The translations under genes were made by a program, and so were the position numbers. From positions 1-64,000 of the IMG/VR virus record IMGVR_UViG_3300033143_001962: a DNA stretch of 64,000 nucleotides. One strand, given 5' to 3'. Below the pieces are notes generated by a model. The model did not search any database. It saw only the letters and a list, made by a program, of their open reading frames with translations, and was not told the origin of the DNA. This document shows positions 2,578 through 29,743 of this stretch, in pieces (position 1 is the first letter of the stretch; each line of letters opens with the position of its first letter).

Positions 2578-2924
2578 CGCACGTTCGGCTGTGGGTGTGG
2601 TAGACGTTCCGGTTGTGCTATCGTGTTGTATATAATTGTTAACCAGTGCTTATCTGAATTCTCAATAACATTACCAGTTTCGTCTAAGTAACCGGGTTGT
2701 ACTTCTTCGGTCATTTTATTAATAACGTCACATGGTACTGCCAGTGTGTCATTACCACTGTTGTAATAATTTATCATTTCCATCACGGTATCGTGATCGT
2801 ACTTGCCTGCGGCTTCTGTTCTAAAACAGTATCCAGCATTTTTTGGATTCCATAATGTAATATACGGGTCTTCTTCTTTAGTGTGCTTTACGCTTACTAT
2901 GTAGTACTTACTTATGTTTTTCAT
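2574..2924 (-). CDS. hypothetical phage protein
   Basis: YYIVSVKHT..DPYITLW.P.NAGY motif; overlaps its neighbours in the operon. Confidence 0.6.
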   Translation of the reverse strand: MKNISKYYIVSVKHTKEEDPYITLWNPKNAGYCFRTEAAGKYDHDTVMEMINYYNSGNDTLAVPCDVINKMTEEVQPGYLDETGNVIENSDKHWLTIIYNTIAQPERLPHPQPNVR

Positions 2925-3156
2925 TTGCTAGGCCTTTTAGTTGTTCAATCAACTCTTTATCAAGTTCTTCTCGGATTCCAATGGCTAATTCTCTTGCCAT
3001 GAAGTCTTGGAATGTTTCTGTTGGCGCTCCATGTTGTAATCTGTGCCATACCTTTTCTTCTTCGGTCATGCCCGCTTCGTCATCAGAAGGCATTATGTCT
3101 GTACCTCTGATATCCCAATTAGCCATTAGTGGGTTAGCTGGTTTTTTATTAGTCAC
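2908..3156 (-). CDS. WxRL-tagged mini-protein with major-capsid backbone-helix fragment
   Basis: EEEKVWHRLQ tag. FMARELAIGIREELDKELIEQLKGLA resembles MCP EIMAALAQEITAEIDQEILLSLRSLA. Confidence 0.65.
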   Translation of the reverse strand: MTNKKPANPLMANWDIRGTDIMPSDDEAGMTEEEKVWHRLQHGAPTETFQDFMARELAIGIREELDKELIEQLKGLANEKHK

Positions 3157-3454
3157 TCATCTTTCCTCTTAATTCGCTTCTGCGTCCTGATATTATAATT
3201 AAATTATTACTTTTTGCAAAGTCCATTAAATGTTTGTACATTCCAGGCGCTTCTTCTTCGAGTCTATCGTCGATACATAATCCTGATGCACTGTGCTCGT
3301 CTACGAAACACGGGTGTACGTACTTGTGATATTGCATACGTTTATTAGCTCCGAATGATGCGGCGGTTCCTGCTAATCGTTTACACCAATCGCTTGGTCT
3401 GAACTTTTTACCTTCTGTAGTTATTCCTACTATTAATTTTGTCGGGTCTGGCAT
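3149..3454 (-). CDS. DUF3579-like protein
   Basis: GITTEGKKFRPSDWCKRL...DDRLEE..P.MY..LMDFAKSNNL matches the proteobacterial DUF3579 pattern as recalled. Confidence 0.7.
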   Translation of the reverse strand: MPDPTKLIVGITTEGKKFRPSDWCKRLAGTAASFGANKRMQYHKYVHPCFVDEHSASGLCIDDRLEEEAPGMYKHLMDFAKSNNLIIISGRRSELRGKMSD

Positions 3455-3474
3455 TTTAATCCTAAATGTTTCTG

Positions 3475-3666
3475 CTATTTAGCCCCGGATAATAACTTCC
3501 AATCTTTTCCATCATACGTCCACATGTCATCCGAACTGTGATCGAAGTAGATGCTGCCGGCTATAGGTTTAGCAAGCGGGTCACTAGTGAATTTTGGACC
3601 AGTGTATTTTAATCTATCCCAGACTTCTTGCTGCTCTTTAGTTAATTGTGGTGTACGTACTGACAT
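3475..3666 (-). CDS. WxRL-tagged mini-protein with tail-fibre repeat unit
   Basis: Likely start MSVRTPQ. Tag EQQEVWDRLK followed by GSIYFDHSSDDMWTYDGKDW. Confidence 0.65.
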   Translation of the reverse strand: MSVRTPQLTKEQQEVWDRLKYTGPKFTSDPLAKPIAGSIYFDHSSDDMWTYDGKDWKLLSGAK

Positions 3667-3946
3667 GCAAGTCTGCTCCGTCAGGTGGAGTTGATTTGAA
3701 CTGTATGGTAGTTGTTGCATTACTTTCAATACTGTAATCAAGTTTATGGCGTAGTTTGCAGCCGTCTTTAAAGACTTCGAATCGCACCTTCTCCAATGTA
3801 AGTGATGGTAATGCAAATACATCGCCCCAACCGTTACCTGTGAAGTGGTTTACACTTATTAGCCGGTCGCTAGCCTGCCTTAGTATATTCCACATTTCCT
3901 TTTTAGACTTAAATGCTTTTGTTATTGTTTTCTTAGGAAGTTTCAT
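3638..3946 (-). CDS. WxxL-tagged mini-protein with virion beta-repeat domain
   Basis: Likely start MKLPKK. Tag KKEMWNILR followed by FTGNG..F...V..DG...DYSI...F..PPDGA. Confidence 0.65.
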   Translation of the reverse strand: MKLPKKTITKAFKSKKEMWNILRQASDRLISVNHFTGNGWGDVFALPSLTLEKVRFEVFKDGCKLRHKLDYSIESNATTTIQFKSTPPDGADLHVSTYTTIN

Positions 3947-4218
3947 TTTAGTCTGCGCCACATTTCCCTTTTGTGATTCTCTTTACGCTCAGCTTTATTT
4001 CTTACATGCACAAAACGTTTATGCTCTACTATCTCATCTAAGTACGGGCAGTTAAACGCAATTTTATCTATGTCATAACTTTGCCCTACTGCTTGACAGG
4101 AGGTAGCAATGTACACACCATCTTGTGATCCGTCAGGCGAGCAGGCATCAATCTCCCACTCAATGTACTCCTGGCATTGTTTATTCCAGCAAAATTCGTT
4201 AAAGACTATGTCAGACAT
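3943..4218 (-). CDS. 4-Cys mini-protein with C-terminal WxRL tag
   Basis: Likely start MSDIV. FNEFCWNKQC...SC...NCPY; ends KREMWRRLK. Confidence 0.65.
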   Translation of the reverse strand: MSDIVFNEFCWNKQCQEYIEWEIDACSPDGSQDGVYIATSCQAVGQSYDIDKIAFNCPYLDEIVEHKRFVHVRNKAERKENHKREMWRRLK

Positions 4219-4522
4219 ATTGTAGTATCCTCCAAATCTTTTCCTTTTTCTTTTGCTTCTGCTCTTCTGCCCATTCCTTTTCAAACAGAAATTTTGCGCG
4301 GGCGTTAGTAACATGCCAATCAACCATACCTTGCAAATGCACACAATTATGCGGGTACGTAGGAATGTTTTCGTCGTTGTCTAAGATCTTAGAGCATGAT
4401 GCATATTCAACAGTGGACACATGAGTTATAAAACCATCTTCCATAATTAATTCTTCGCCGTACTCACTATAGCACTCGCACTCAAAATGATCTCTGCAAA
4501 GTTCGTACCAATTATAACTCAT
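4211..4522 (-). CDS. 4-Cys mini-protein with C-terminal WxxL tag
   Basis: YELCRDHFEC...SC...NCVH; ends KEKIWRILQYV. Confidence 0.65.
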   Translation of the reverse strand: MSYNWYELCRDHFECECYSEYGEELIMEDGFITHVSTVEYASCSKILDNDENIPTYPHNCVHLQGMVDWHVTNARAKFLFEKEWAEEQKQKKKEKIWRILQYV

Positions 4523-4731
4523 TTTAATTTATCCTCAGGGATGGACATTGCATCGTGTATCCTCTGCATGTACTGTTCTCTGAATTTATGCATCGTTGGC
4601 TGCACTGCTGTTTTAATAACATCTATATCTATATCTGCCCATCTATGCCAGCCAGTCTTAGGCTTGTTATCACCTTTAAGCTTATCCCACATTATCCACT
4701 TAGCTGTCTTTGTTTTCTTCGTCTTTTTCAT
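4519..4731 (-). CDS. WxKL-tagged mini-protein
   Basis: Likely start MKKTKK. Contains IMWDKLKGDNKPKTGW, shared with 6000..6311. Confidence 0.6.
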   Translation of the reverse strand: MKKTKKTKTAKWIMWDKLKGDNKPKTGWHRWADIDIDVIKTAVQPTMHKFREQYMQRIHDAMSIPEDKLK

Positions 4732-4969
4732 ATTCTGCTCTGGCTTGTGCAAACTGTTTGTTAGTAATCGGGAGGCCGTGTATCGTCCCGTAAATATCAT
4801 CGTCAGACATTGGCTGTATGCCTACTATATCATTTGCTAATAGTGTTGGCATTACCTTTCTAATCATTGGTATCACTATACTATCAAACCCGGGCTTGTG
4901 TACTTTCTTCAAAGCCCTGAATGTTTTTTGTGCGTCACTTATTGTCTTTTTAGTTAGTTTAAAAGACAT
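4700..4969 (-). CDS. mini-protein carrying the major-capsid Gol-region fragment
   Basis: IVIPMIRKVMPTLLANDIVGIQPMS is 15/25 identical to MCP residues 60-84 in this window. Confidence 0.75.
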   Translation of the reverse strand: MSFKLTKKTISDAQKTFRALKKVHKPGFDSIVIPMIRKVMPTLLANDIVGIQPMSDDDIYGTIHGLPITNKQFAQARAEYEKDEENKDS

Positions 4970-5234
4970 CTATGTACACCGGCATGTTGTTGATCCTTTT
5001 TAAGCTCTTTTCGGGCTCTAATAATTTCTTCCACATCATATCTTTTTTCTTTGCTTCATGCTTTGCTTTCTTAATATCTTCCATGTGTGGGCAATTTTCC
5101 GCTATCTTTAAAATATTAAATGTAATCTTGCTGGTGCCGATGCTGCATGTTATACACCTACCTACTTGCATTTTAATATCAGCGAAGTGCTTACACTCCT
5201 TTGCTCTGCAAAATTCGTTAAAGTTATACGCCAT
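4959..5234 (-). CDS. 4-Cys mini-protein with WxKL tag
   Basis: Likely start MAYNF. FNEFCRAKEC...TC...NCPH, tag KDMMWKKLL, tail INNMPVYIDVF. Confidence 0.65.
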   Translation of the reverse strand: MAYNFNEFCRAKECKHFADIKMQVGRCITCSIGTSKITFNILKIAENCPHMEDIKKAKHEAKKKDMMWKKLLEPEKSLKRINNMPVYIDVF

Positions 5235-5457
5235 TCCTATCATTATACACTTGATTGAGCAATGGTTCTACACCTTTGGATACATCGCGTATAACGCCAG
5301 GGTAGAATGAACTAATATCGTAATCGACTATATGCACACCTGGTTTCATTACGTGTCCTGTCTGTGACAGACGTTTCCACATTGCATCTTGCTCGCGTTT
5401 TAATTGCTTGCGCAAGCCGTTGCGTATTTTACGTTTAGTAATTTCTATTGCATTCAT
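5224..5457 (-). CDS. WxRL-tagged mini-protein with family B DNA polymerase motif A fragment
   Basis: Tag QDAMWKRLS followed by IVDYDISSFYPGVIR (compare PolB DxxSLYPSII). Confidence 0.65.
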   Translation of the reverse strand: MNAIEITKRKIRNGLRKQLKREQDAMWKRLSQTGHVMKPGVHIVDYDISSFYPGVIRDVSKGVEPLLNQVYNDRNGV

Positions 5458-5585
5458 TTATCATCTGGCTCGTTGAATATTATTTTAGCATTTTGGTAAT
5501 CTACCTGAAGCGGTATATACGGGCAATATATATAACCTGCGTTTACCTCTACTTCCACTGGAACGAATTTTAATTTGTCCCACAT
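5454..5585 (-). CDS. 43-aa WxKL-tagged mini-protein with capsid YCPYIPL fragment (not in ORF track)
   Basis: MWDKLKFVPVEVEVNAGYIYCPYIPLQVDYQNAKIIFNEPDDK; AAGGA RBS; ATGA overlap with the next gene. Confidence 0.7.
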   Translation of the reverse strand: MWDKLKFVPVEVEVNAGYIYCPYIPLQVDYQNAKIIFNEPDDK

Positions 5586-5601
5586 TATTTCCTTATCTGT
5601 T

Positions 5602-6003
5602 TTATTCGTGTTGTCCAAACTCTACTCTCTCGGCCATATTTTTCTTAATTTGATTCTGACGGTTCATATTATGAATTGTTCTAGCAAACGATGAGCGACA
5701 TAATACTGTTAAATACGAATACGCATTGCTACTCTTAGTTTCATCGTATCTGTGATAGTACCGTAACATATTAGTAATTGCGTCTTGTATTAAGTCCTCA
5801 GCGTATGTAAACGATTGAAAATTTTTCCTAGTTAATTCTTTCTCTGCTAAATGTACAAGGTACTTTGCTAAGTTGCCAGTCGTTTGTTTAATCAGTTTCG
5901 AGTGACGTATTGCTTCGCGTAACTCTGCGTTGGTTGTGATCTCAACTTGGTTGTACCATGGTGCTTTTAACTTACGCCAAAATAATTTTTGTTCTTTGTT
6001 CAT
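5602..6003 (-). CDS. compact gp55-like (late sigma) paralogue with N-terminal WxKL tag
   Basis: TTGNLAKYL..L.E...R.N...FTY.ED....A......Y DETKSSNAYSY.T....SF.R aligns with 28673..29653. Confidence 0.75.
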   Translation of the reverse strand: MNKEQKLFWRKLKAPWYNQVEITTNAELREAIRHSKLIKQTTGNLAKYLVHLAEKELTRKNFQSFTYAEDLIQDAITNMLRYYHRYDETKSSNAYSYLTVLCRSSFARTIHNMNRQNQIKKNMAERVEFGQHE

Positions 6004-6311
6004 ACAGAAGACGATTCAAAGTCTATTAGAATGGGGCTGTTTTTAGTACGTACTGCCCGGCCAAGACTCTGGAAAGCGATCATACTTTTCCCTACACCAG
6101 ACTGTGCTGTGAATCCATTTATGAAGCTACGGTTAATACCGTGCATGAAGTTTGATGCTTCTGCAAGATTCCGCCAACCTGTTTTCTTAGGTGTATTATC
6201 GCCACTAAGCTTGTTCCATATTTGCGAGGGTGTGCCGTGTATCTTTTCAAACTGCTTACGTTTGCCGTTTGCTATCTTACGTTTATTAATCTGTACTTTA
6301 CTTTCTTTCAT
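6000..6311 (-). CDS. WxKL-tagged mini-protein with RecA/DnaB-type Walker A fragment
   Basis: SQIWNKLS...TGWRNL...GINRSFINGFTAQSGVGKSMI...ILIDFE, then the protein ends. Confidence 0.65.
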   Translation of the reverse strand: MKESKVQINKRKIANGKRKQFEKIHGTPSQIWNKLSGDNTPKKTGWRNLAEASNFMHGINRSFINGFTAQSGVGKSMIAFQSLGRAVRTKNSPILIDFESSSV

Positions 6312-6463
6312 CGTGGTCCTGTATTCTTTGTTGGCTGTTTCATCGACAAAAATATACTAGATAGTAATTTCCATTCTTTCTGTGCTTCGGTGAGTGGAGG
6401 AGTGCTTAACTTCTTCCACATTTCGTGCTGTTCTCTTTCTTCTTTTGTTTTAAATATTTTCAC
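6308..6463 (-). CDS. WxKL-tagged mini-protein
   Basis: Likely GTG start after an AGGA RBS; EREQHEMWKKLS. Confidence 0.55.
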   Translation of the reverse strand: MKIFKTKEEREQHEMWKKLSTPPLTEAQKEWKLLSSIFLSMKQPTKNTGPR

Positions 6464-6743
6464 GGTGCTTCCTGAGTTTTGCTTTTGCTTGTACCCGTGT
6501 ACTAAAATCCGTAGATTCCACATCACGCATCAAATTTGCCAGTGCATCCCTTTCTTGTGCTAATCGTTTTTCTTCTTCGTAGTCAACATCAGCAGACATC
6601 ATTCGTGCTCTAATTCTGACAGACATATCCTGATCTTTACATAATAAATCCAAGTGCTTGCGGGTATGGATTAGCTCAATCTTTTCTTCTTGCGTCAGTG
6701 CTGAAATACGTAGCACATCAAATAAGTCTGTTTCAGTTGTCAT
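6450..6743 (-). CDS. small helical-repeat-like protein, paralogue of 8065..8268
   Basis: DLF..L...ALTQ.EK...I...KHLD....D.D..VR..AR. Confidence 0.6.
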   Translation of the reverse strand: MTTETDLFDVLRISALTQEEKIELIHTRKHLDLLCKDQDMSVRIRARMMSADVDYEEEKRLAQERDALANLMRDVESTDFSTRVQAKAKLRKHRENI

Positions 6744-6900
6744 ATAACGTTTTCTTCTTGCCCATTGTTGCCATTAAGTACGATCTGACTAGATAATTAT
6801 CTTGTACCGCGAAGTTAGGATCAATCCAATATGACTCAACGGCATGCTGAATGCTTCCGTACTTTAATTTTAAAAATGTTACCACTTGTTCAATTTCCAT
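6733..6900 (-). CDS. FLxLKYGS-family mini-protein, 55 aa (not in ORF track)
   Basis: MEIEQVVTFLKLKYGSIQHAVESYW...; directly downstream of a promoter. Confidence 0.65.
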   Translation of the reverse strand: MEIEQVVTFLKLKYGSIQHAVESYWIDPNFAVQDNYLVRSYLMATMGKKKTLYDN

Positions 6901-6949
6901 TTCTAATCGCCAATAGCCGCTTGTTTATGAGGTTGCGCTTTTAAGCTAC

Positions 6950-6979
6950 ATAATAACATTTTATGTTATAAAAAGTCAA
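6950..6979 (-). promoter_or_regulatory. sigma70-type early promoter
   Basis: TTGACT-18 nt-TATTAT with TGn extension. Confidence 0.6.
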
Positions 6980-6986
6980 GTATTTG

Positions 6987-7328
6987 CTAAACATCATTTG
7001 CCAAAATTGCTGTGGCTGATGGCTTTATGCGTTTACGATCGTTGTCGTACTGAGCTGTAGCAATTTCAATACTGCTTAAATGTTTTAATAATGAGTGGAG
7101 TTTTTTATCTTCGTTGCCTAACTTTGACCACATAATGTCTTTGCTGAACAAGGTGCGAATCGCGTTAACGTTTGTTTCAATTCTTTCTAACCTGCCATTG
7201 AACTCGCCTACGTTTCCATTGTGCTGCCGGACCGTGTGTGCGAGCTTAGTTTTCAACCCCGAAATTTCATCGTCTTTGTCACGGAGTTGTTGTTGCAGGT
7301 CTCTAATTAAATTCTTCTTAGCTGTCAT
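6987..7328 (-). CDS. coiled-coil protein with internal WxKL tag
   Basis: Heptad-rich N-half; KDIMWSKLG. Confidence 0.6.
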   Translation of the reverse strand: MTAKKNLIRDLQQQLRDKDDEISGLKTKLAHTVRQHNGNVGEFNGRLERIETNVNAIRTLFSKDIMWSKLGNEDKKLHSLLKHLSSIEIATAQYDNDRKRIKPSATAILANDV

Positions 7329-7380
7329 AAATCACCTAAATGTTATCAATACTACGCTTTCTTACTACGACTACGAGCTA

Positions 7381-7409
7381 AGTATAACATTTTTTGGTGC
7401 AGAAGTCAA
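7381..7409 (-). promoter_or_regulatory. sigma70-type early promoter
   Basis: TTGACT-17-TATACT with TGn extension. Confidence 0.75.
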
Positions 7410-7582
7410 GCTTTTCGCTTATTTAGGTTAATAAAGTTGTAATTATTGTATTGTTCTTTGGAGTACAGTAGGAGTGCTTTGTGTTCGTCGTTGGATAGAT
7501 TGATATCATTGTTGACCCAAAGGTCGAATGCGTTTGTCATGCTGCCGTACTTGAGAATTAGAAAGGTTTTTGCCTGGTCCAT
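7406..7582 (-). CDS. FLxLKYGS-family mini-protein, 58 aa (not in ORF track)
   Basis: MDQAKTFLILKYGSMTNAFDLW... Confidence 0.65.
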   Translation of the reverse strand: MDQAKTFLILKYGSMTNAFDLWVNNDINLSNDEHKALLLYSKEQYNNYNFINLNKRKA

Positions 7583-7634
7583 AGTAAATATTTACCATAG
7601 TACGGCTTTTTACGTGGGGGCGCTTTTGACCCTA

Positions 7635-7663
7635 AGTATAACGTTTTGTTATTTAAAAGTCAA
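7635..7663 (-). promoter_or_regulatory. sigma70-type early promoter
   Basis: TTGACT-17-TATACT. Confidence 0.75.
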
Positions 7664-7869
7664 GTTTTTATTAGCAGTTTGAAGAACATTGCGTCTTGCT
7701 CTTGCTCAAACCAGAAGACTGGGGCGGTGTACTGATATATAAATTTGCCAGTGGTGTGCTTGCTGCACCATGCGGATAGTTCTAATAGATTATTTTTACT
7801 ATGTGTGAATGATACTTTATACCATGTGTTTCTATCAAAGGCATCGTAACATTCTTGATTCTTTTTCAT
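7660..7869 (-). CDS. small hypothetical phage protein (W-C...FWFEQEQDAMFFKL type)
   Basis: Overlaps the upstream gene (ATGA); motif style common in small phage proteins. Confidence 0.6.
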   Translation of the reverse strand: MKKNQECYDAFDRNTWYKVSFTHSKNNLLELSAWCSKHTTGKFIYQYTAPVFWFEQEQDAMFFKLLIKT

Positions 7870-8072
7870 CGGAAGTTATTTATTTTTTTCAGTATATCAA
7901 GCAACTCCGGAATGTCCGGGTGTAAGTCCGGATCAATGCTATCCAGCCAGTGCTTGAACTCTTGGTCGTATTTTTGTATATTGATTTCTTTAATGAGCTC
8001 TAATTTCTGCTCGGTGGTTAAATACTCTTTGGTTAATCTATGCCACAGTTCTTTCTTTTCTTCTTCACTCAC
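7866..8072 (-). CDS. mini-protein with N-terminal WxRL tag
   Basis: MSEEEKKELWHRLT. Confidence 0.6.
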   Translation of the reverse strand: MSEEEKKELWHRLTKEYLTTEQKLELIKEINIQKYDQEFKHWLDSIDPDLHPDIPELLDILKKINNFR

Positions 8073-8268
8073 TTTGCCATCCTAGCGTTTTAAGTTGTTT
8101 GTTTATTCTAACGTACTCTTGTTTATGCTTTTGCTTTCTTGCGTATCTTCTAACTTCACTATCATCATCGTTTTCAAAATAATCTAAGTGCTTGTTACTA
8201 GCAATGCATAACATCTTTTCGTACTGAGTGAGGGCGTTTAATTTTATAATTGTGAATAAATCTTCCAT
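8065..8268 (-). CDS. paralogue of 6450..6743
   Basis: Likely start MEDLF; ALTQYEK...KHLDYFENDDDSEVRRYAR. Confidence 0.6.
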   Translation of the reverse strand: MEDLFTIIKLNALTQYEKMLCIASNKHLDYFENDDDSEVRRYARKQKHKQEYVRINKQLKTLGWQSE

Positions 8269-8373
8269 AGCTATGTCTGTGTTTTTGCGCTTGGGCAACT
8301 CACTTCGTGCCTTGCGTTCTCTCTGTAAGTTACAGTCGAACCTACTCACCAAGCTCCTTGCTTTCGCAGACTA

Positions 8374-8403
8374 AGCATAACATATTTTAGAGGCAAAAGT
8401 CAA
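8374..8403 (-). promoter_or_regulatory. sigma70-type early promoter
   Basis: TTGACT-18-TATGCT with TGn extension. Confidence 0.6.
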
Positions 8404-8418
8404 CCGAGGTTTGCCAAA

Positions 8419-8859
8419 CTAAACGTTGTCGTTTTCATGTAGGCGTGTGTATAATGATAGTGCTAAATCAAATTGCATAATATGTGACATTATCCAGGGA
8501 CGGATTATCGATACTAAGTAGTATCCCATAACTTTTGGATTATGCGATAACTGTGATGTGTCAGCAACTTGATGACGTATATCATTGTGTGATTCTTTGT
8601 GACAATCGGCTGCTAATTTAGGAAATCCAATTCTATGCATTAGTGCTTCTTCGTGTTCTAAATGTGTGTCAACGTAGTCAACTAGCTCATCGTAGTACTG
8701 CTGAATGTGCTCTATTGTTGGGTCATCGTGTGTAATTTCGTTAATAATATTATTGCATAATTTAAACAGATTTCGGTGTTCGTTATCTATTTGTAAGTCG
8801 CCTGTTTCAAGGTCAGGTTGCCATTCTAACGGCGTTAGATTATCGGATTGTGGGGTCAT
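8419..8859 (-). CDS. bacteriohemerythrin
   Basis: W...LETGDLQIDNEH..LF, HLEHEEALM, HKESH, WIMSHIMQFD: complete hemerythrin di-iron ligand set (H, HxxxE, HxxxH, HxxxxD). Confidence 0.9.
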   Translation of the reverse strand: MTPQSDNLTPLEWQPDLETGDLQIDNEHRNLFKLCNNIINEITHDDPTIEHIQQYYDELVDYVDTHLEHEEALMHRIGFPKLAADCHKESHNDIRHQVADTSQLSHNPKVMGYYLVSIIRPWIMSHIMQFDLALSLYTRLHENDNV

Positions 8860-8891
8860 TGTATAGTCCTATTTTAAGTTAGCTATTAGTA

Positions 8892-8920
8892 ATTGTAGCA
8901 CGGAATCGCACCAAAGTCTA
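8892..8920 (-). promoter_or_regulatory. sigma70-type promoter for hemerythrin
   Basis: TAGACT-17-TACAAT with TGn; a GATAAATA late-type box also lies at 8930..8937. Confidence 0.55.
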
Positions 8921-8942
8921 GTAGTTTTTTATTTATCGTGTT

Positions 8943-9089
8943 TCATTTTAATGCAAAAAATTCGTTAAGCATATTGAATTCTGCTACTGGCATTTTAGCG
9001 ACTGCTGACCAATTCATCATCATATCATATGCTTTTTGTTGTGATCCGTACTTAATAACAATGAATGATTTTATTTCTTCAGTACTCAT
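8943..9089 (-). CDS. FLxLKYGS-family mini-protein
   Basis: Likely start MSTEEIKSFIVIKYGSQQKAYD. Confidence 0.6.
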   Translation of the reverse strand: MSTEEIKSFIVIKYGSQQKAYDMMMNWSAVAKMPVAEFNMLNEFFALK

Positions 9090-9261
9090 AAGTGTACGCT
9101 CCTGTTCGGCGATTATTGTCTTTTGCCCATTGTGCAATCAGATCTGATTCTTCTTGTGTAAATGAGGTATCATCAAATTTATACATCCATTCTTCATAAG
9201 CAAGTATCATACTACCGTACTTTAGTACAAGAATTAGTTCAGTGTCTTTACCCGTTTTCAT
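9079..9261 (-). CDS. FLxLKYGS-family mini-protein
   Basis: ELILVLKYGSMILAYEEW. Confidence 0.65.
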   Translation of the reverse strand: MKTGKDTELILVLKYGSMILAYEEWMYKFDDTSFTQEESDLIAQWAKDNNRRTGAYTYEY

Positions 9262-10311: not shown

Positions 10312-10320
10312 ACCCGCCTA

Positions 10321-10696: not shown

Positions 10697-10697
10697 T

Positions 10698-12094: not shown

Positions 12095-12123
12095 AAAAAA
12101 AAGCACTCCGAAGAGTGCTTTTT
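12095..12123 (-). terminator. intrinsic terminator after major capsid gene (likely bidirectional)
   Basis: Minus strand AAAAAGCACTC-TTCG-GAGTGCTTTTTTTT with a UUCG tetraloop. Confidence 0.9.
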
Positions 12124-12146: not shown

Positions 12147-13337
12147 TTAGCTGAAAGACAAGTTGCTTACGCTGATTTCGCCTAAGTAATCACCAGCATT
12201 ACCAAAAGATGATGCAGTGTTAGTGAGTTCCACGTAACCATAACGTGTCATGAAGCTTACAACTGGTTCGAACGTAGACGGATCTAAAACAACGCCTGAG
12301 CTCATTAAAGGAATGTAAGGGCAGTAGAACGCTGGAGCGTCTGCTTCACTTGAACCTTTATAACCAATAAGTACCGGAGTACTATCAGCAGCATATGAAT
12401 CAACATATACTTTCATAGCACTGTTTAATGTACCAACTAACTTAGTGTTAGTAGGAGCTTCAAAAGTACCTTCAGTTGTACGTGCAAATGCAGATGTAGT
12501 AGCTGATTGTAATACTGTTAATGCAGCTGGACTAACAACGGCATAGTTACCTGCGCCACGACGTGTACGTTGTGCGATAAGGTTAGCAGTACGGTTAACT
12601 AATACAGCAAGTGCCGCATGTTCATCACCTACGAATGTAGCAGTACCAGATACAGCAGCTTGATCGTAGTTGAATTCAGTTGACGCTAAAGAACGTAAAG
12701 ATAATAAAATCTCTTGATCGATTTCAGCGGTAATTTCTTGTGCTAATGCAGCCATGATTTCAGCTTCGACATCAATGCCGTGCATTGATTGTGCATCTTG
12801 AGCAGCTTCAAAAGTCCAACGCGCTTGTAACTTACGTGTCTTCGCTTCAACAGCTTGCTTTAAGATTTGAACGGAAATGTTACGACCGCCTTCACCTTCC
12901 ATTTGCGCTGTAGCAGCACCACGGTAGTCAGTCTGTGTAGCACCAACGCCTGCAGAGTATGCTTGAGCAATTTTGAAAGGACTTAACGCTTCATCACCAG
13001 CTGTAGTTGGTGTACCAGCAGCAGATGTATCGTTCATTGTTGAACCGTAACGTACACGTAAAGTATGGATCTGGCTTACTGGACCAGACATTGGTTGAAC
13101 ACCTACTAATTCGTTTGCAATTACCGTAGGCATTACACGTCGAATTACTGGTAAAATTACACGGTTTAATGTTGCAACGTTACCAGCGGCAGTAGCGCCA
13201 CTTGTAGCAGATTCTGCTAAGTGGTTACGAGTGTTTTCTAGGATTACGCCCATTGTAGAACGTTTAGTACCGTCTAGACCTTCAAGCAATGCTTCTTTAG
13301 TCTCTCCCCAACGGCCTTCTAATAGTGCTTGTGACAT
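12147..13337 (-). CDS. gp23: major capsid protein (T4 gp23-like)
   Basis: RRVMPTVIANELVGVQPMSGP, KTRKLQARWTFEAAQD..HGID.EAE, FYCPYIPL, FMTRYG. Confidence 0.95.
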   Translation of the reverse strand: MSQALLEGRWGETKEALLEGLDGTKRSTMGVILENTRNHLAESATSGATAAGNVATLNRVILPVIRRVMPTVIANELVGVQPMSGPVSQIHTLRVRYGSTMNDTSAAGTPTTAGDEALSPFKIAQAYSAGVGATQTDYRGAATAQMEGEGGRNISVQILKQAVEAKTRKLQARWTFEAAQDAQSMHGIDVEAEIMAALAQEITAEIDQEILLSLRSLASTEFNYDQAAVSGTATFVGDEHAALAVLVNRTANLIAQRTRRGAGNYAVVSPAALTVLQSATTSAFARTTEGTFEAPTNTKLVGTLNSAMKVYVDSYAADSTPVLIGYKGSSEADAPAFYCPYIPLMSSGVVLDPSTFEPVVSFMTRYGYVELTNTASSFGNAGDYLGEISVSNLSFS

Positions 13338-14465: not shown

Positions 14466-15098
14466 CTAAATTTTAAGATCTTTGATAAACTTCATTACTT
14501 CAGTCTTCAAATATCTTTGTACACGTTTGTCCGTACTAGCTTCTTCTGCTATACCTAACATTTTAAGTCCGCCATTAAAATTCATAATGCCTTCGTATAT
14601 TGCTGTAGGGTACGCTTCAGGCGCACTAGGTTGGGCAACTATATCAACAGTGATTATTTCGAAATCACTGACGTGTCCGTTGGCTTCGTTAACATTGCCG
14701 CTTCCGCGACTTGATACACCTAACTTAACACCTGCTTCAAGCATAGTTTGAATAACTGTTCCTGAAGGTGTTGGTAGTATCTTTAACTTGCCATAACCGT
14801 TTGCGCCTTCCATCCACATATCTGTAATCATGTGCGACACACGGTCTAAATTTATTTTCAAATCTTCTGGATGATCTATTTCGCCTAAGACGCTATAGCC
14901 ACCCTTGATTTGTTCTTTTAGTGTTTGTACTGCGGTTGATATTTCATTTACTGGATATACACGTTGGTTTGCATTACGTTGGTCTCCCTGTATGCAAATG
15001 CCTTTCATGTATAAGTCTTTGCCGCCTGTGTCGTTAGCTTCGTTTAAAAGCTCGACTCTAGCAGCATCAAAAGATAAATGTTCCTGTAAAATTCCCAT
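14466..15098 (-). CDS. gp21: prohead protease (gp21-like)
   Basis: RNANQRVYP, LGEIDHP, VSHMIT, LGVSSRGSG, TVDIVAQPSAPEAY. Confidence 0.93.
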   Translation of the reverse strand: MGILQEHLSFDAARVELLNEANDTGGKDLYMKGICIQGDQRNANQRVYPVNEISTAVQTLKEQIKGGYSVLGEIDHPEDLKINLDRVSHMITDMWMEGANGYGKLKILPTPSGTVIQTMLEAGVKLGVSSRGSGNVNEANGHVSDFEIITVDIVAQPSAPEAYPTAIYEGIMNFNGGLKMLGIAEEASTDKRVQRYLKTEVMKFIKDLKI

Positions 15099-16558: not shown

Positions 16559-18259
16559 TTATGGTAAGTCAACATCTACAGTATCAGGACCTTCTGCGTC
16601 CATACTGTCCATGTCTTCCATGTCTTCCATATCTTCGAAGTCACTCATGTCGCCTAAGTCGCCATCCATACCGCCCGGACTAACACCTACGCCACGTAAA
16701 TCAGATCCACTAGTGCCGCCCTCTTCGTCGTCTACAGCATTTTCTTCGCGCCATAGTTCTTCGTTCTCTGTCATTTCTTCTTCAGTTAAACCTAAGTAAC
16801 GTTTAAGTGCGAAGCGTTTAGACATATAAGGTATGTCCGCTGTACTGCCGAAGTTACCTAAACGTGCAGTATCAAGCTCACTTTGTCGGTAGCTTGCAAA
16901 GTTCTGTGGGTTATTAAACTTAATATCAAATAAGCCTGCGTCAATGTTAAAGCCTCTCCAGCGTAAAAACATCTTAAACTCTTCGTTTAATTGTGTTACA
17001 AGTACGTTTTGTAAGCGTTCGCAGTACTGGTTAAATCTAAATTCTTGTATTAATGCGCCAGTACCACCATCTTGTTTAGTAGTTTGATCTGCGCTGTCGT
17101 CTGGGCCGCTTGGCAAGTAACTGCTAGGTACACGTAAGCCACGTGCCATTTTGTTGTTAAAGTAACGTAAGTCATCTATCTCACTTAAGTTTTGTCCACC
17201 CGGTAATGTATCTACTGTAGAGCCACGTCCGTCTGCATCCTTAGGGAAGAAGTAATCTTCATTCATTGATATAGGATTATAGCTTGCATCAAGCATATTC
17301 TGCCCACCGCCGTTCTGTGTAGGTATACGTCGTTGATGCATTTCATTCTTAATACGTTCCACAAAGCCCATAGCTAAGTGACTAGGCATATTACCAGTAT
17401 CAATGTTAAACACTCTACGTTCTGGTGCGCGTTGGATACGATAAATTAATATAGCATCTTCTAATAATTCTTTTTGTTTATACACTTTAAACACTTGTTC
17501 AAGTATACTTTGTCCAAATGGCCAGTTATAATCCATGCCTTCTGTTAAGCTTAAGTGCATAATATGAGCAGCATCAATAGCTACTTCTTGTTGATTAAGA
17601 CTAAAACGTCCATGACTTCCGCCGTCTTGATTTGGAATTGTGTACGATTGTGGTGCAGTGGCGCCTTGCCCTGGTGCTCCGTTTTGGAAATCACTTGTTG
17701 TCTTTGCGGCTACTGTTAAGTTCTCAAAGTTAGGGTTAATGTCTTGTATAATGTACTGCTCTGGCTTTTTACCTTCACTTTCATTTACAATAACTCTTGT
17801 TACTTTATTAGTTTCAATCCAAAATAGTTTAAATGTTTCTGGATCACGGATAAACACTTGGTCTCCGTATTTAATAGAGTTACGGAATACTTTAAAGATA
17901 CGCTTGTCGAACTCGTTAAGCTTAACCCATTGTGTTAACTGTTCAGCTAGTATTTTAACTTCGTTGTCTGTAGGTTTTTCACTGTAGCTTATTTCAAATG
18001 CAGTTTTGTTTTGTTCATTTTGTTGTGTACTGAACTCAGCAATAATATCTAAACATGCATTGATTTCGCTGTCCATATCCATTGTCTCGTACTGATTGTA
18101 ACGTTCAATACGATTAGGGTGCCCAGTGTACACTTCCGGTAATGTGTTCTTGTAGTTTTGAAAACCAAAGTTCTTACCGTCGGGTCCGTGACTCGCTCCG
18201 CTTATTGGGCTCATCATTCCTGTTGTGTCTGCTACTTTGAAATACTTTTTCCATGCCAT
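16559..18259 (-). CDS. gp20: portal protein (gp20-like)
   Basis: LLEDAILIYRIQRAPERRVFNIDTGNMP, SMNEDYFFP, TVDTLPGGQNLSEIDDLRYF. Confidence 0.95.
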   Translation of the reverse strand: MAWKKYFKVADTTGMMSPISGASHGPDGKNFGFQNYKNTLPEVYTGHPNRIERYNQYETMDMDSEINACLDIIAEFSTQQNEQNKTAFEISYSEKPTDNEVKILAEQLTQWVKLNEFDKRIFKVFRNSIKYGDQVFIRDPETFKLFWIETNKVTRVIVNESEGKKPEQYIIQDINPNFENLTVAAKTTSDFQNGAPGQGATAPQSYTIPNQDGGSHGRFSLNQQEVAIDAAHIMHLSLTEGMDYNWPFGQSILEQVFKVYKQKELLEDAILIYRIQRAPERRVFNIDTGNMPSHLAMGFVERIKNEMHQRRIPTQNGGGQNMLDASYNPISMNEDYFFPKDADGRGSTVDTLPGGQNLSEIDDLRYFNNKMARGLRVPSSYLPSGPDDSADQTTKQDGGTGALIQEFRFNQYCERLQNVLVTQLNEEFKMFLRWRGFNIDAGLFDIKFNNPQNFASYRQSELDTARLGNFGSTADIPYMSKRFALKRYLGLTEEEMTENEELWREENAVDDEEGGTSGSDLRGVGVSPGGMDGDLGDMSDFEDMEDMEDMDSMDAEGPDTVDVDLP

Positions 18260-27797: not shown

Positions 27798-28686
27798 GAA
27801 GCTCCTTTGGGTATGTATATGTCCATAATTCTGTTGTTGTTTTGGGAAAGTCGTCACCAATGTCATTACATCTTAATTCGAGATTTAATTCTTCTCTAAG
27901 ATATTTTTGTATGTATGCTTCGTCGTATACGGTACTGTCGTCTGGCATGTTGCAATTAATGTGTTTAGTAAAGTTATCTAAGAACAGTGCTATATCTTTG
28001 TCCTTATTAAGGTGCTTTTGTAAGCTTAACATTTCATTGTGATTTGTCATTATAGTGTCGTAACTTTCGGTTACGTCGAAGTTAAGTTCACGCGCTAACC
28101 GCATTAATGTATTTTTAAAATCAAATAATAAATCTTTGATGTTGATTTCAATACACTTGTCCTTGCTATTATATTCGCCAACTGAATTTACGCCTTTGAT
28201 AAATTCTTTATAACTGTAAAATTCTCGCATGTTTGCAACTTTTGAAAAATCCTCATCATTGATTTCTTTTCTATGCTGGTCTATTAGATATCTGTCATGA
28301 ACTTTATCGTGCTTGTTGTTGCGAATTAATAAATGCATGTCTGCGTCGGATCTAATTAATATACCTTTGACAACTTTTGATAAAATGTAATCAACACTTT
28401 CACCAGCACTCGAATCGGTTAAGTCACGCTCGTCATTAAATACATGATGCATTCGGAAAAACGGAAGTGTGTCTGGCCCGTGTACATGTTGCTCGAACGT
28501 AGGCATGTTAATCCTTGAGTTATATATTGTGAAATTTTTCTGCGTGTGAGAATTGCCATTCTTTCCCCACGGCAATTCCGGACTATCACAAAGCCCAATG
28601 CTGGTAAAATTGTTAAGTACCCAATAAAGATACGACCCGTATGCTCCAGGCTCGTATATTATAGGTATTGTTTTACTTTTTGTCAA
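27790..28686 (-). CDS. hypothetical protein, possible sulfotransferase-like P-loop fold
   Basis: N-terminal IIYEPGAYGSYL loop. Confidence 0.35.
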   Translation of the reverse strand: MTKSKTIPIIYEPGAYGSYLYWVLNNFTSIGLCDSPELPWGKNGNSHTQKNFTIYNSRINMPTFEQHVHGPDTLPFFRMHHVFNDERDLTDSSAGESVDYILSKVVKGILIRSDADMHLLIRNNKHDKVHDRYLIDQHRKEINDEDFSKVANMREFYSYKEFIKGVNSVGEYNSKDKCIEINIKDLLFDFKNTLMRLARELNFDVTESYDTIMTNHNEMLSLQKHLNKDKDIALFLDNFTKHINCNMPDDSTVYDEAYIQKYLREELNLELRCNDIGDDFPKTTTELWTYTYPKELHE

Positions 28687-29653
28687 GTTTCTCGTCTGTT
28701 AAATGTTTGTCGTCTGAGTTGTCATTACTAAACTGTCTAGTCCAGCTAGGAGTTAGTCCGTTAGCTTCTAAAATGTCATCACGTATGTTCTGCATCTTCT
28801 TCTCGATGTTTAGTACCCTGGTAAAGCTGTTAGTAACTGCGGCAGTGTAGTACGCAAATGGATTTTGTGATTTCATTTCATTAAACTGTAGTCCAATTTG
28901 ACTAAGCTGTAATAAAGCTTGCCCTTGCATCTCATCATTGTAAGTATAACCACGCCAGTTACTGCGCGTTCCGTAACGTTCGCATAACTTCATGTACATC
29001 ATTGCTAAGTTGCCAGTCGTCCGCCCGTGATCTTTATTAAATGCACCAGTTTCTAAATCACCTTTCCAATGACTCTTACCTACTAGCTGTACTGCCATAG
29101 CATTATCGCCTTCCATAGCAAACCCGTGGTCTGCTAACTTTGAAACACGGTAGTGATAAAATGCAGGAAAGCCACAACGCATAGGAATCATTTCTACTTC
29201 GAGCCCAGTGCCGTCTAGTAACTCTAATTCATCGTCGTTTAATAAATCATCAAACACTGCATTAGCTTTTGCCTGCTTAGCCGCTTTAGCAGTAGCAGCT
29301 TTTGATTTCTTTTTAGGTACAAGTGGAATGTGTTCTGTAGTCATTACTCTGTAAACTACATCTTCTAATTTGATATCTTCTAATTCGGTGGGAATGTCAA
29401 GCTTTGTTAAGCGTGTTGCCCTTGCCTGTCTGCCAAGTAGTGTAACCGGTACGTCTTCCATGATGGGCTTTCCATCTTTGTCTTTGCTTACTTCGACATT
29501 TTGTGTACCCCAAATGTCCGATAAGTTTTCTACTATGAAGTCTTGTTGATTGTCTTCTACTTTGTCCAGAAAAGAACAGTATGAAATTTTACTTAAGTGT
29601 ATCTCTTTCAACATATCCTTGTTATTTAAATAATTCTTTTTACGTTTAGCCAT
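28673..29653 (-). CDS. gp55: late transcription sigma factor (gp55-like)
   Basis: NYLNNKDML, RSNWRGYTYNDEM, FNEMKSQNPFAYYT; adjacent to gp47/gp46 as in T4; likely start MAKRKK. Confidence 0.85.
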   Translation of the reverse strand: MAKRKKNYLNNKDMLKEIHLSKISYCSFLDKVEDNQQDFIVENLSDIWGTQNVEVSKDKDGKPIMEDVPVTLLGRQARATRLTKLDIPTELEDIKLEDVVYRVMTTEHIPLVPKKKSKAATAKAAKQAKANAVFDDLLNDDELELLDGTGLEVEMIPMRCGFPAFYHYRVSKLADHGFAMEGDNAMAVQLVGKSHWKGDLETGAFNKDHGRTTGNLAMMYMKLCERYGTRSNWRGYTYNDEMQGQALLQLSQIGLQFNEMKSQNPFAYYTAAVTNSFTRVLNIEKKMQNIRDDILEANGLTPSWTRQFSNDNSDDKHLTDEKLDKK

Positions 29654-29681
29654 ACATCTCCTTGTAGCTTTAGATTTAACT

Positions 29682-29709
29682 ATTATAGCACATAAGCATA
29701 ATAAGTCAA
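29682..29709 (-). promoter_or_regulatory. sigma70-type promoter for gp55-47-46 operon
   Basis: TTGACT-16-TATAAT with TGn extension. Confidence 0.7.
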
Positions 29710-29743
29710 CCATAATTTATTATATTGGGTTATAATATGTACT

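What the first reader, a model, noticed from the sequence alone, without database searches (positions are those of the whole stretch)
4700..4969. Stand-alone copy of the Gol-peptide region of the major capsid protein
IVIPMIRKVMPTLLANDIVGIQPMS vs this phage's MCP VILPVIRRVMPTVIANELVGVQPMS: 15/25 identical, and all 10 differences are conservative. In T4 gp23 the equivalent segment is the Gol peptide, which binds EF-Tu and activates the Lit protease (established knowledge). A free, early-expressed version could be a decoy or antagonist of Lit-like or capsid-sensing defences, or an EF-Tu ligand (inference).
Basis: partly seen in the sequence, partly recalled or inferred. Interest (0 to 1): 0.8.

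Follow-up and report, generated by a model that had tools for sequence, protein, structure and literature searches.

The report
Stand-alone capsid-motif mini-protein gene
A jumbo phage carries a small, conserved, probably early gene that encodes a free copy of the most conserved stretch of its own capsid protein (the T4 "Gol" segment). It is one of a set of modular mini-proteins that copy conserved pieces of essential phage proteins, most likely to compete for whatever binds those pieces.

Summary
ORF 4700..4969 (-) encodes 89 aa. Residues 28-55 match the phage's own major capsid protein (MCP, 12147..13337 -) at residues 57-84 (15/28 identical, 26/28 similar) and T4 gp23 at 94-119, the Gol region. 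It passes Pfam Gp23 (35 bits; cut-off 24.4).

It is a real gene. Orthologues in three other contigs keep the frame and the neighbours, with dN/dS 0.14-0.21.

It is not a lone oddity. About 40 distinct stand-alone "mini-Gol" proteins occur on uncultured jumbo-phage contigs, with more than one origin. Partner mini-genes carry other top-conserved MCP segments. Others carry pieces of the late sigma factor, a DnaB-type Walker A segment and, weakly, a PolB motif A. Each cargo is fused to a lineage-specific leader; here that is a W-x-K/R-L motif present in 15 of 36 array genes.

The array lies behind the MCP terminator. Four near-identical sigma70-type promoters point to early expression.

Function was not tested. 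My best reading is a trans-acting mimic that competes for a ligand of the Gol segment (EF-Tu, a Lit-like or other capsid sensor, or the MCP itself). No description was found in the papers searched, and no second locus in cultured phages.

The parts
4700..4969 (-). ORF89: the stand-alone MCP-derived mini-protein gene (89 aa plus stop). Its ATG overlaps the end of the upstream gene by 11 nt.
   Evidence: Orthologues P0002 and P0003 with conserved neighbours. dN/dS 0.14-0.21.
4805..4888 (-). Gol-like core, aa 28-55. It matches own MCP aa 57-84 and T4 gp23 94-119.
   Evidence: Family-wide invariant or near-invariant residues P34, R37, P41, I44, A45, G50, V51, Q52, P53, M54.
4898..4936 (-). Leader helix, aa 12-24. 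It holds an F-variant of the array's W-x-K/R-L motif.
   Evidence: AF2 helix 12-21 has the highest pLDDT of the model. The leader is conserved in orthologues, including P0005, which lacks the core. Motif family.
4703..4762 (-). C-terminal helix and acidic/lysine-rich tail, aa 70-89.
   Evidence: AF2 helix 70-85. Conserved in P0002, P0003 and P0005. Acidic tails are general in the mini-Gol family.
12147..13337 (-). Major capsid protein, Gp23 family, 396 aa: the parent family of the copied segment.
   Evidence: Pfam Gp23 E 1.2e-95. 64-68% identical to the MCPs of Vibrio phage 2.275.O and PA5oct.
13086..13169 (-). Gol-equivalent segment of the MCP itself, aa 57-84.
5454..5618 (-). Partner mini-gene (54 aa): W-x-K-L leader plus a copy of the MCP C-terminal '..YCPYIPL' segment (MCP aa 331-344; T4 gp23 458-465).
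   Evidence: Local BLASTP E 0.006. Pfam Gp23 E 0.043 at model positions 312-326. phrog_13936 E 0.0018. The motif occurs only twice in the six-frame window, in the MCP and here. The same kind of mini occurs in L010, L014, L018 and L019.
5602..6003 (-). Mini late-sigma: F-W-R-K-L leader plus a fragment of a gp55-like late sigma factor. It is a paralogue of part of 28673..29713.
   Evidence: phrog_234 E 7.9e-22; Sigma70_r2 E 4e-5. BLASTP to ORF 28673..29713 aa 231-316, E 5e-12.
6000..6311 (-). Mini with extended basic leader plus a RecA/DnaB-type Walker A segment.
   Evidence: Pfam divDNAB E 0.14, weak. The relative L012:813-1034 hits primase/helicase phrog_239 at E 1e-4, DnaB phrog_19 at E 2e-4 and the RecA Walker A region. 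Leader alignment.
5224..5457 (-). Mini with extended leader plus a PolB motif-A-like segment (weak).
   Evidence: The only tblastn hit in 2.3 Gb of phage genomes is a DNA polymerase, E 0.7. Similar cargo in P0177. No Pfam support.
4519..4731 (-). Downstream neighbour (70 aa from the internal ATG) with the W-x-K-L leader; cargo unrecognised. It is the positional counterpart of the MCP spine-helix minis of L010.
   Evidence: No Pfam hit.
4959..5243 (-). Upstream neighbour: a Cys-rich small protein ending in the W-x-K-L motif. The synteny is conserved in L001.
6950..6979 (-). Nearest upstream sigma70-type promoter-like site with an extended -10. It is one of four near-identical sites in the gaps of the array. 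Genes from here down to about 3475 are packed or overlapping.
12098..12123 (-). Strong intrinsic-terminator-like hairpin just after the MCP gene, separating it from the array.

Best explanation
ORF89 is a functional gene for a small, largely unstructured protein made of three modules: a short helical leader, a copy of the Gol-equivalent segment of a Gp23-type major capsid protein, and a helical acidic tail.

It belongs to a modular family of jumbo-phage mini-proteins. In these, a lineage-specific leader is fused to a copy of one of the most conserved linear segments of an essential phage protein.

Most likely mechanism (inferred, not shown): the free segment acts in trans as a molecular mimic. 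It is made from host-type promoters before the capsid protein. It occupies the partner that normally reads this segment, so that the later flood of MCP is handled differently. Candidate partners are EF-Tu (the only ligand known for the T4 segment), a host sensor that reads the segment (Lit-like or other capsid sensors), or the MCP/assembly machinery itself. The shared leader would be a common handle that docks all these minis to one hub.

Shown here: gene reality, homology, conservation, modularity, recurrence, promoter context. Inferred: binding by mimicry, the partner, and the timing.

A real gene under selection:
- Orthologues P0002 (68%) and P0003 (60%) are full length, with the same neighbours.
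- pN is 0.18-0.24 against pS 0.63-0.64, giving dN/dS 0.14-0.21.

The residues kept in about 20 diverse minis are the invariants of the MCP family, T4 included. The minis lack the rest of the HK97 fold. The constraint is therefore best explained by a binding function of the linear segment. This matches the T4 finding that a 29-residue Gol peptide suffices for EF-Tu binding (PMC3014915).

Recurrence:
- An exhaustive phmmer search of 1.84 billion representatives returned almost only small proteins.
- About 40 of the 139 small proteins fetched are true minis, some on contigs of 130-465 kb.
- The tree needs at least 2 origins (5 in the ML tree). ORF89 groups with P0002, P0003, P0009 and P0011 (support 95/93), far from its own MCP.

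Battery of minis:
- Minis with other MCP segments lie beside or near the mini-Gol in several lineages.
- 7 of the 9 best-conserved 12-mers of eight diverse MCPs occur as cargo.
- Other cargo: late sigma and helicase Walker A.

Leader:
- The motif W-x-K/R-L is in 15 of 36 array genes against 1.25 expected.
- It varies at synonymous sites, so it is a protein-level motif.

Timing and context:
- There is a terminator after the MCP, and four near-identical sigma70-type promoters with extended -10 lie in the array gaps. The late-type TATAAATA occurs only before the portal gene.
- In another lineage the minis lie between the late sigma gene and gp47/46-like genes. In L017 the mini lies two genes from Acb1.

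Precedent:
- T4 Srd, Srh and Mrh are listed as early decoys resembling sigma segments (PMC3594737).
Against: - No binding, expression or phenotype data exist. Laying public runs gave only scraps of diverged relatives.
- The free T4 Gol peptide activates Lit. A faithful copy would be an agonist unless its flanks change the outcome.
- EF-Tu is very abundant, so stoichiometric titration by a small early protein is doubtful.
- Orthologue P0005 keeps the leader and tail but has a degenerate core. The core may not be the essential part in this orthologous group.
- The AF2 model has low confidence (pLDDT 60), so nothing structural supports a binding mode.
- Cargo such as a PolB active-site motif or a Walker A loop is not an obvious interaction epitope.
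- Recognising cargo by similarity is biased towards conserved segments.
Confidence: 0.45

Rival explanations
1. Specific Lit/EF-Tu reading. The mini-Gol binds EF-Tu domains II-III like T4 Gol. Either it blocks Lit-type proteases from using the MCP-EF-Tu complex, or it modulates translation.
For: The core aligns to T4 gp23 94-119 with the family invariants kept. The Gol peptide alone binds EF-Tu, and the region is the most conserved part of gp23 (PMC3014915). EF-Tu also appears with the MCP in Avs7 complexes and is cleaved in type IV Thoeris. Early-type promoters lie upstream.
Against: It does not explain the partner minis with other MCP segments, or the sigma and helicase cargo, all with the same leader. 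A free Gol activates Lit. EF-Tu is too abundant to titrate. The host is unknown, and no Lit homologue was examined.
Confidence: 0.2
2. Capsid-assembly interference or chaperoning. The minis bind MCP subunits by mimicking segments that make intra- or inter-subunit contacts. This would either hold the phage's own MCP in check or help it fold, or poison the capsids of co-infecting gp23-type phages (dominant-negative exclusion).
For: Four different MCP segments are copied, which points at the MCP rather than at one external ligand. T4 gp23 residues 66-105 form a mobile arm that refolds and makes inter-subunit contacts on expansion (PMC9546572). The copied segments are conserved across all gp23-type phages, so they would fit competitors' MCPs too.
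Against: It does not account for the sigma, helicase and polymerase-like cargo. The promoter context suggests expression before the MCP. Minis would poison the phage's own assembly unless they are removed.
Confidence: 0.15
3. Protease pseudo-substrate. The leader docks the minis to host Lon (or another quality-control protease). The hydrophobic conserved segments act as degron-like baits that clog the protease or divert it, so that unassembled phage proteins are protected. This would be functionally like T4 PinA.
For: The extended leader of sister minis resembles E. coli Lon residues 199-228. Lon is the only family found in a PDB-wide profile search (E 0.095). hhalign gives probability 58% with 43% identity over 28 columns, and pairwise BLASTP gives E 0.005. 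That T4 inhibits Lon with PinA is from my own knowledge.
Against: The similarity is borderline and lies in a charged helical segment prone to chance matches. ORF89 itself has only the short leader, not the Lon-like part. There is no Pfam support.
Confidence: 0.07
4. Incidental cargo. The functional part is the leader and tail of a fast-evolving family of small early proteins. MCP-like pieces were captured by illegitimate recombination in a hyperplastic region (possibly promoted by homing endonucleases near MCP genes) and have no role of their own.
For: P0005 keeps the leader and tail without the core. The whole array evolves fast: 29-44% identity between window and L010, against 88% for the MCP. 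Endonuclease genes flank MCP genes in RaK2, RHph_I1_18 and Vibrio phage 1.081.O.
Against: The core is the best conserved part across about 20 divergent minis, and it keeps exactly the MCP invariants. Neutral cargo would decay at the saturated synonymous distances seen. The same segments recur with different leaders in independent lineages.
Confidence: 0.1

Closest known systems
Gol region of T4 gp23 (trigger of the e14 Lit protease through EF-Tu)
   Same: Homologous segment: ORF89 aa 31-56 align to gp23 94-119. The invariant residues are kept. In T4 the isolated peptide is active on its own.
   Different: In T4 the segment exists only inside the 521-aa capsid protein. Here it is a separate 89-aa gene with its own leader and tail, probably transcribed early. 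No EF-Tu or Lit data exist for it.
Gp23-family paralogues such as the T4 vertex protein gp24
   Same: Derived from the major capsid protein gene family (Pfam PF07068).
   Different: gp24 is a full HK97-fold capsid subunit. ORF89 covers only model positions 4-48 of 376 and cannot form the fold.
T4 Srd, Srh and Mrh: small early proteins resembling a segment of host sigma factors, listed as decoys (PMC3594737)
   Same: The same principle: a small early phage protein that copies a segment of a larger protein and is thought to compete with it. The window has a direct analogue, the mini late-sigma at 5602..6003.
   Different: Here the copied proteins are the phage's own essential proteins. The copies are fused to a shared leader and come as a multi-gene battery.
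Anti-defence competitors of a structural trigger, for example DSAD1 against DSR2, which senses the tail tube (PMC11087589 abstract)
   Same: The proposed logic: a phage protein competes with a structural-protein trigger for the sensor.
   Different: Not being a homologous fragment of the trigger is my recollection for DSAD1. ORF89 is a literal copy of the trigger-type segment. No sensor is identified for it.
T4 PinA, inhibitor of Lon protease (own knowledge)
   Same: Only a possible functional analogy for the sister minis whose leader resembles a Lon helix.
   Different: No sequence relation was tested, and ORF89 lacks the Lon-like part of the leader.

Membership tests
Pfam PF07068 Gp23 (major capsid protein family) | Sequence score above the curated gathering threshold | tested here: met
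   35.2 bits against 24.4, E 1.2e-8
Pfam PF07068 Gp23 (major capsid protein family) | Full-length HK97-type capsid subunit covering the model (about 350 or more residues, with A and P domains) | tested here: not met
   Only model positions 4-48 of 376 are matched. The protein has 89 aa. The AF2 model shows three short helices at pLDDT 60. It is a fragment derivative, not a capsid subunit.
T4 Gol peptide (functional class) | Positional homology to gp23 residues about 93-122 | tested here: met
   ORF89 31-56 align to gp23 94-119; own MCP 57-84
T4 Gol peptide (functional class) | Conservation of the residues needed for activity (13 of a 20-residue core by scanning mutagenesis) | tested here: inconclusive
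   The family invariants (R, P, I-A, G-V/I-Q-P-M) are kept. The list of critical T4 residues could not be read, because the paper is not held.
T4 Gol peptide (functional class) | Binds EF-Tu domains II-III and enables Lit cleavage of EF-Tu | not testable with these tools
   This needs biochemistry or multimer modelling.
Phage anti-defence decoy / trigger competitor | Made before or together with the trigger | tested here: inconclusive
   Four near-identical sigma70-type promoters lie in the array gaps, and a terminator separates the array from the MCP. Overall promoter-like counts are not above shuffles. There are no transcript data.
Phage anti-defence decoy / trigger competitor | Sits with known anti-defence genes | tested here: inconclusive
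   One lineage (L017) has the mini two genes from Acb1. The window array has no recognised anti-defence gene.
Phage anti-defence decoy / trigger competitor | Binds the sensor and blocks its activation | not testable with these tools
   No sensor is identified and the host is unknown.
Pseudogene / decaying remnant of an MCP duplication | No purifying selection; broken or unconserved frame; further MCP remnants in collinear order | tested here: not met
   dN/dS 0.14-0.21 with saturated dS. The frame is intact in four contigs. The MCP C-terminal motif mini lies upstream of ORF89, not downstream, and both are separate leader-bearing genes.
Sequencing or assembly artefact (truncated or frameshifted MCP call) | N-terminus identical to a true MCP N-terminus; gene at a contig end or broken by a frameshift | tested here: not met
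   ORF89 has its own N-terminus, and an intact MCP lies 7 kb away on a 249,797-bp contig. By contrast, 97 of the 139 small proteins fetched are such artefacts and were set aside.

The most novel reading that the evidence does not exclude
Gp23-type jumbo phages encode batteries of early 'handle-plus-bait' mini-proteins. The handle is a lineage-specific leader, in one form perhaps a mimic of a host Lon helix. The bait is a copy of one of the most conserved, hard-to-mutate segments of the phage's own essential proteins: four MCP segments including Gol, the late sigma factor, the replicative helicase, and perhaps the polymerase. Together they would form a general counter-measure against host factors (immune sensors or proteases) that recognise phages through exactly these segments.
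Probability: 0.25. Interest if true: 0.9.

Novelty: new variant of a known kind. Interest (0 to 1): 0.72.

Why it matters
The Gol segment is the best-conserved part of T4-type capsid proteins. Why it is conserved, and why it binds EF-Tu, has never been explained. Here the same invariant residues are kept in dozens of free-standing mini-proteins that lack the capsid fold. This argues that the segment is an autonomous ligand, and it provides small natural constructs to test that (EF-Tu, Lit, other capsid sensors).

If the wider pattern holds, it would be a new strategy in the phage-host arms race: many mini-genes, each fusing a shared leader to a conserved segment of an essential phage protein. 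The phage would pre-load copies of its own unavoidable molecular signatures. The pattern would also be a practical guide to which short motifs host systems read. It would further explain part of the 'dark' small-gene content of jumbo phages.

Tried and rejected
- **Chance match or mis-called ORF:** rejected.
- **Decaying MCP duplicate:** rejected. The order of the fragments is not collinear, each is a separate leader-bearing gene, and selection is strong.
- **Truncated or frameshifted MCP artefacts:** these are common among database hits (97 of 139) and were filtered out. ORF89 and about 40 others are not of this kind.
- **P0004 (1194 aa, 18 matching stretches):** a junk tandem-repeat translation that resembles the motif by chance.
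- **DNA-level repeat as the source of the W-x-K/R-L motif:** rejected. The codons differ at synonymous sites.
- **Close relatives among cultured phages:**
  - Megablast found none.
  - tblastn with ORF89 and with the L018 C-terminal-motif mini found one place per record, at annotated MCP genes in the rows listed.
  - tblastn with the lineage-B mini-Gol P0043 did the same, apart from 10 records with two places that I did not inspect.
- **Transcription evidence:** no run was listed for the array. Runs found with the MCP gave only scraps of diverged relatives.
- **Structure:** the AF2 model has low confidence, so no fold search was run. The protein-atlas search gave nothing above chance level.
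- **Spatial adjacency of the copied MCP segments:** could not be tested, because no coordinates are available. Mapping to T4 places the Gol segment at the N-arm/P-domain junction and the C-terminal motifs (458-465, 481-487) before the A-P linker. I therefore dropped the idea that they form one sheet.
- **PolB motif-A cargo:** stays weak.
- **The paper with the Gol mutagenesis data:** not held.

Full report
**Source and setting**

The window is the first 64 kb of IMG/VR contig IMGVR_UViG_3300033143_001962, which is 249,797 bp long. It has no close DNA relative among 50,697 cultured phage records.

Its major capsid protein (MCP, 12147..13337 -, 396 aa) is a Gp23-family protein (Pfam E 1.2e-95). 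It is 64-68% identical to the MCPs of Vibrio phage 2.275.O, PA5oct and the RaK2-like jumbo phages. Upstream on the same strand lie a T4-type portal (16559..18259), a prohead protease (14466..15098) and a scaffold-like gene. The phage is thus a gp23-type jumbo phage, the group that has no RNA polymerase of its own and uses phage sigma factors (PMC7824862).

**The observation**

ORF 4700..4969 (-) is intact and encodes 89 aa. BLASTP gives 15/28 identities and 26/28 positives, E 3e-11.

Independent of its own MCP, the protein passes the Pfam Gp23 threshold on residues 28-74 and hits PHROG 138 on residues 17-76. About 60 residues are therefore MCP-derived.

Residues 31-56 align to T4 gp23 94-119, the Gol region. 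A review states that a 29-residue stretch of gp23 defines Gol, that it binds EF-Tu domains II-III, that this allows Lit to cut EF-Tu, and that it is the most conserved part of gp23 (PMC3014915).

**It is a gene, not a remnant**

Full-length orthologues exist:
- P0002: 93 aa, 68% identical, locus L001.
- P0003: 89 aa, 60% identical, loci L007 and L008.

They have the same neighbouring genes. Synonymous sites are saturated (pS 0.63-0.75) while pN is 0.18-0.27, giving dN/dS 0.14-0.21. The leader, the core and the C-terminal helix are all conserved.

More distant positional counterparts sit in syntenic arrays downstream of the MCP in L010 (P0009) and L012 (P0011). [quoted passage not shown] The branches are long (0.3-0.6 plus a stem of 0.68). 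The phage's own MCP sits in a tight cluster with branches near 0.05. The alignment is short, so only this coarse result is used. The mini was therefore not copied recently from the resident MCP, and it evolves much faster. Between the window and L010 the MCPs are 88% identical and the minis 43%.

**A family of stand-alone mini-Gol proteins**

An exhaustive phmmer search of 1.84 billion representatives returned 28 hits at E <= 1e-3. All but one have fewer than 200 aa. The 1194-aa exception is a junk repeat.

A profile search restricted to small proteins gave 2,921 hits. Most of the best ones are truncated or frameshifted true MCPs. Of the 139 proteins I fetched, however, about 40 have their own N-terminus, the core, and a stop soon after it, usually behind an acidic tail. 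Several lie on contigs of 130-465 kb.

Across about 20 divergent minis the invariant or near-invariant positions are P34, R37, P41, I44, A45, G50, V51, Q52, P53 and M54. These are the invariants of the MCP family, including T4. The tree needs at least two origins of minis from MCPs, and five in the ML tree.

No cultured phage showed a second, mini-type locus. One place per record was found. Ten two-place records were not inspected.

**The neighbours change the picture**

The 9 kb downstream of the MCP is an array of small genes on the same strand. Fifteen of 36 carry the short motif W-x-K/R-L, against 1.25 expected from shuffles. In the window plus L010, L012 and L007 the figure is 43 of 86 against 3.0 expected. 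The codons vary synonymously, so the motif is at protein level. ORF89 carries an F-variant of it in its leader.

The motif sits behind a charged helix and in front of variable 'cargo'. Alternatively it sits at the very C-terminus of other small domains.

| Cargo | Examples | Evidence |
|---|---|---|
| MCP C-terminal 'YCPYIPL' segment | window 5454..5618; L010 7703..7921 | |
| gp55-like late sigma fragment | window 5602..6003, paralogous to 28673..29713 | phrog_234 E 8e-22; |
| DnaB/RecA-type Walker A segment | window 6000..6311; L012 813..1034 | phrog_239 E 1e-4; AAA_25 E 0.002; |
| PolB motif-A-like segment (weak) | window 5224..5457; P0177 | |
| MCP spine-helix region, behind an extended form of the same leader | P0160, 48% identical to window MCP 167-210 | E 1e-12; Pfam Gp23 E 5e-12; |

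In an independent lineage (L014, L018, L019) two or three minis are involved. They carry the 'AFYCPYIPL' segment, the Gol segment and the 'F-x-TRYG' segment. They lie side by side in L018 and L019; in L014 the third lies about 1 kb further on. All share a different leader. They sit between the late sigma gene and gp47/46-like genes. A third leader type is shared by the mini-Gol P0073 and a 52-aa neighbour, two genes from an Acb1 gene.

In an alignment of eight diverse Gp23-type MCPs, 7 of the 9 best-conserved 12-mers occur as mini cargo somewhere. This is partly biased, because conserved segments are easier to recognise. However, a direct BLASTP of all small window ORFs against all large ones found only these segments.

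**Expression context**

A strong terminator-like hairpin follows the MCP (12123..12098). The four gaps of more than 60 nt inside the array hold near-identical sigma70-type promoters. Each has -35 TTGACTT, a 17-18 nt spacer and an extended -10 TGTTATACT or a close variant, at 8403, 7663, 7409 and 6979.

From the promoter at 6979 the genes run packed or overlapping through ORF89, with no predicted terminator on that strand. The T4 late-type TATAAATA occurs once, 29 nt before the portal gene. This supports early, host-polymerase transcription, but it is inference from sequence. Overall promoter-like counts do not exceed shuffles, and public runs gave no transcript evidence.

**Structure**

AlphaFold2 with the family alignment gives a low-confidence model (pLDDT 60) with three helices: 12-21, 36-48 and 70-85. 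This fits a protein that folds on binding. No fold search was justified.

In T4, gp23 residues 66-105 are a mobile arm that becomes ordered on capsid expansion. The A-P linker is 486-502 (PMC9546572). Mapping places the Gol segment at the arm/P-domain junction and the C-terminal cargo segments at 458-465 and 481-487. I could not test whether the copied segments touch each other.

**How it most likely works**

*Shown:* a conserved, selected, modular gene whose central module keeps exactly the MCP invariants without the MCP fold.

*Inferred:* the segment is kept because it binds something as a linear element, as the T4 Gol peptide does. Free copies made early compete for that partner. The partner could be:
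- EF-Tu;
- a sensor that reads the segment — Lit and CapRel are noted as detecting the MCP through short motifs;
- the MCP or the assembly machinery.

The shared leaders suggest a common docking hub.

One lead for the extended leader is a resemblance to E. coli Lon residues 199-228. Lon is the only family found in a PDB-wide profile search (E 0.095). hhalign gives probability 58% and pairwise BLASTP gives E 0.005. This is borderline and does not involve ORF89's short leader.

Against a simple decoy model:
- the free T4 Gol peptide activates Lit;
- EF-Tu is very abundant;
- the orthologue P0005 has lost the core but kept the leader and tail, while a neighbouring gene in its contig has a weak Gp23 hit.

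**Comparison with what is known**

The nearest precedents are:
- the Gol region itself: same segment, but never described as a separate gene;
- gp24: a full-length paralogue;
- the T4 early proteins Srd, Srh and Mrh, listed as decoys resembling sigma segments (PMC3594737).

Searches of the held literature found no description of stand-alone MCP-segment genes or of leader-plus-conserved-segment batteries.

**Verdict**

Its mechanism is untested and probably too narrow. I rate the finding a new variant of a known kind (fragment-mimic small phage proteins), with a realistic chance of being a new general strategy.

Noticed in passing
window 2900-11700 (- strand); also L010, L012, L007: A short protein motif (hydrophobic)-W-x-K/R-L occurs in 15 of 36 small genes of the array (shuffle mean 1.25), and in 43 of 86 genes when related loci are added. 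It lies either after a charged N-terminal helix or at the extreme C-terminus. Its binding partner is unknown.
   Followed up: partly
window 5454-5618 (-): A 54-aa gene with the W-x-K-L leader and a copy of the MCP C-terminal '..YCPYIPL' segment. Equivalent minis lie next to or near mini-Gol genes in L010, L014, L018 and L019.
   Followed up: yes
window 5602-6003 (-) and 28673-29713 (-): A 133-aa truncated paralogue of the 346-aa gp55-like late sigma factor, carrying the same leader motif at its N-terminus. It could be a competitor of the late sigma.
   Followed up: partly
window 6000-6311 (-) and 5224-5457 (-); L012 813-1034 and 671-868: Minis with an extended basic leader. One is fused to a DnaB/RecA-type Walker A segment (supported for the L012 copy). 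The other is fused to a PolB motif-A-like segment (weak).
   Followed up: partly
Leaders of window 6192-6311 and 5356-5457 (-), L010 10103-10363, P0144-P0185: The extended leader (about 36 aa, starting MKET..QVNERKIRNG..) resembles E. coli Lon residues 199-228. Lon is the only PDB family hit (E 0.095); hhalign gives probability 58%. This is borderline and may be chance in a charged helix.
   Followed up: partly
window 6733-11277 (-): About a dozen tandem paralogues of 55-70 aa share an N-terminal '..LILKYGS..' motif (one gene, 9611-9940, has two copies). The same family occurs in L010. Function unknown.
   Followed up: no
window 4959-5243, 4211-4522, 3943-4344 (-): Three Cys-rich paralogues ('..NEFC..C..' pattern, possibly zinc-binding). 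Each ends in the W-x-K/R-L motif. Orthologues occur in L001, L007, L010 and L012.
   Followed up: no
window 6950-6979, 7381-7409, 7635-7663, 8374-8403 (-): Four near-identical sigma70-type promoters with an extended -10 lie in the only gaps of more than 60 nt in that part of the array. A T4 late-type TATAAATA lies 29 nt before the portal gene (18288).
   Followed up: partly
window 39102-52130 (+): A single 4342-aa ORF. Similar 4200-4284-aa genes run off the ends of loci L018 and L019, which come from the other mini-bearing lineage.
   Followed up: no
window 8419-8859 (-) and 3149-3454 (-): Inside the small-gene array lie a hemerythrin HHE-domain protein (Pfam E 5e-13) and a DUF3579 protein (E 1.4e-25).
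   Followed up: no
L024 (RaK2), L025 (Vibrio phage 1.081.O), L026 (RHph_I1_18): In several cultured gp23-type phages the gene next to the MCP is annotated as an endonuclease or Seg-like homing endonuclease. This is a possible route by which MCP fragments get copied.
   Followed up: no
P0008, P0033; P0030, P0034, P0037: Some mini-Gol proteins carry an MCP propeptide-like helix after the Gol core (permuted order). Others start like an MCP N-terminus, then have the leader inserted where the MCP has its presumed maturation-cleavage region, then the Gol core and a stop.
   Followed up: no
L007 76-279: In the relative L007 the gene just upstream of the ORF89 orthologue is a 67-aa leader-bearing mini. 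It carries only the second half of the Gol core ('..DLVGVQPM..').
   Followed up: no
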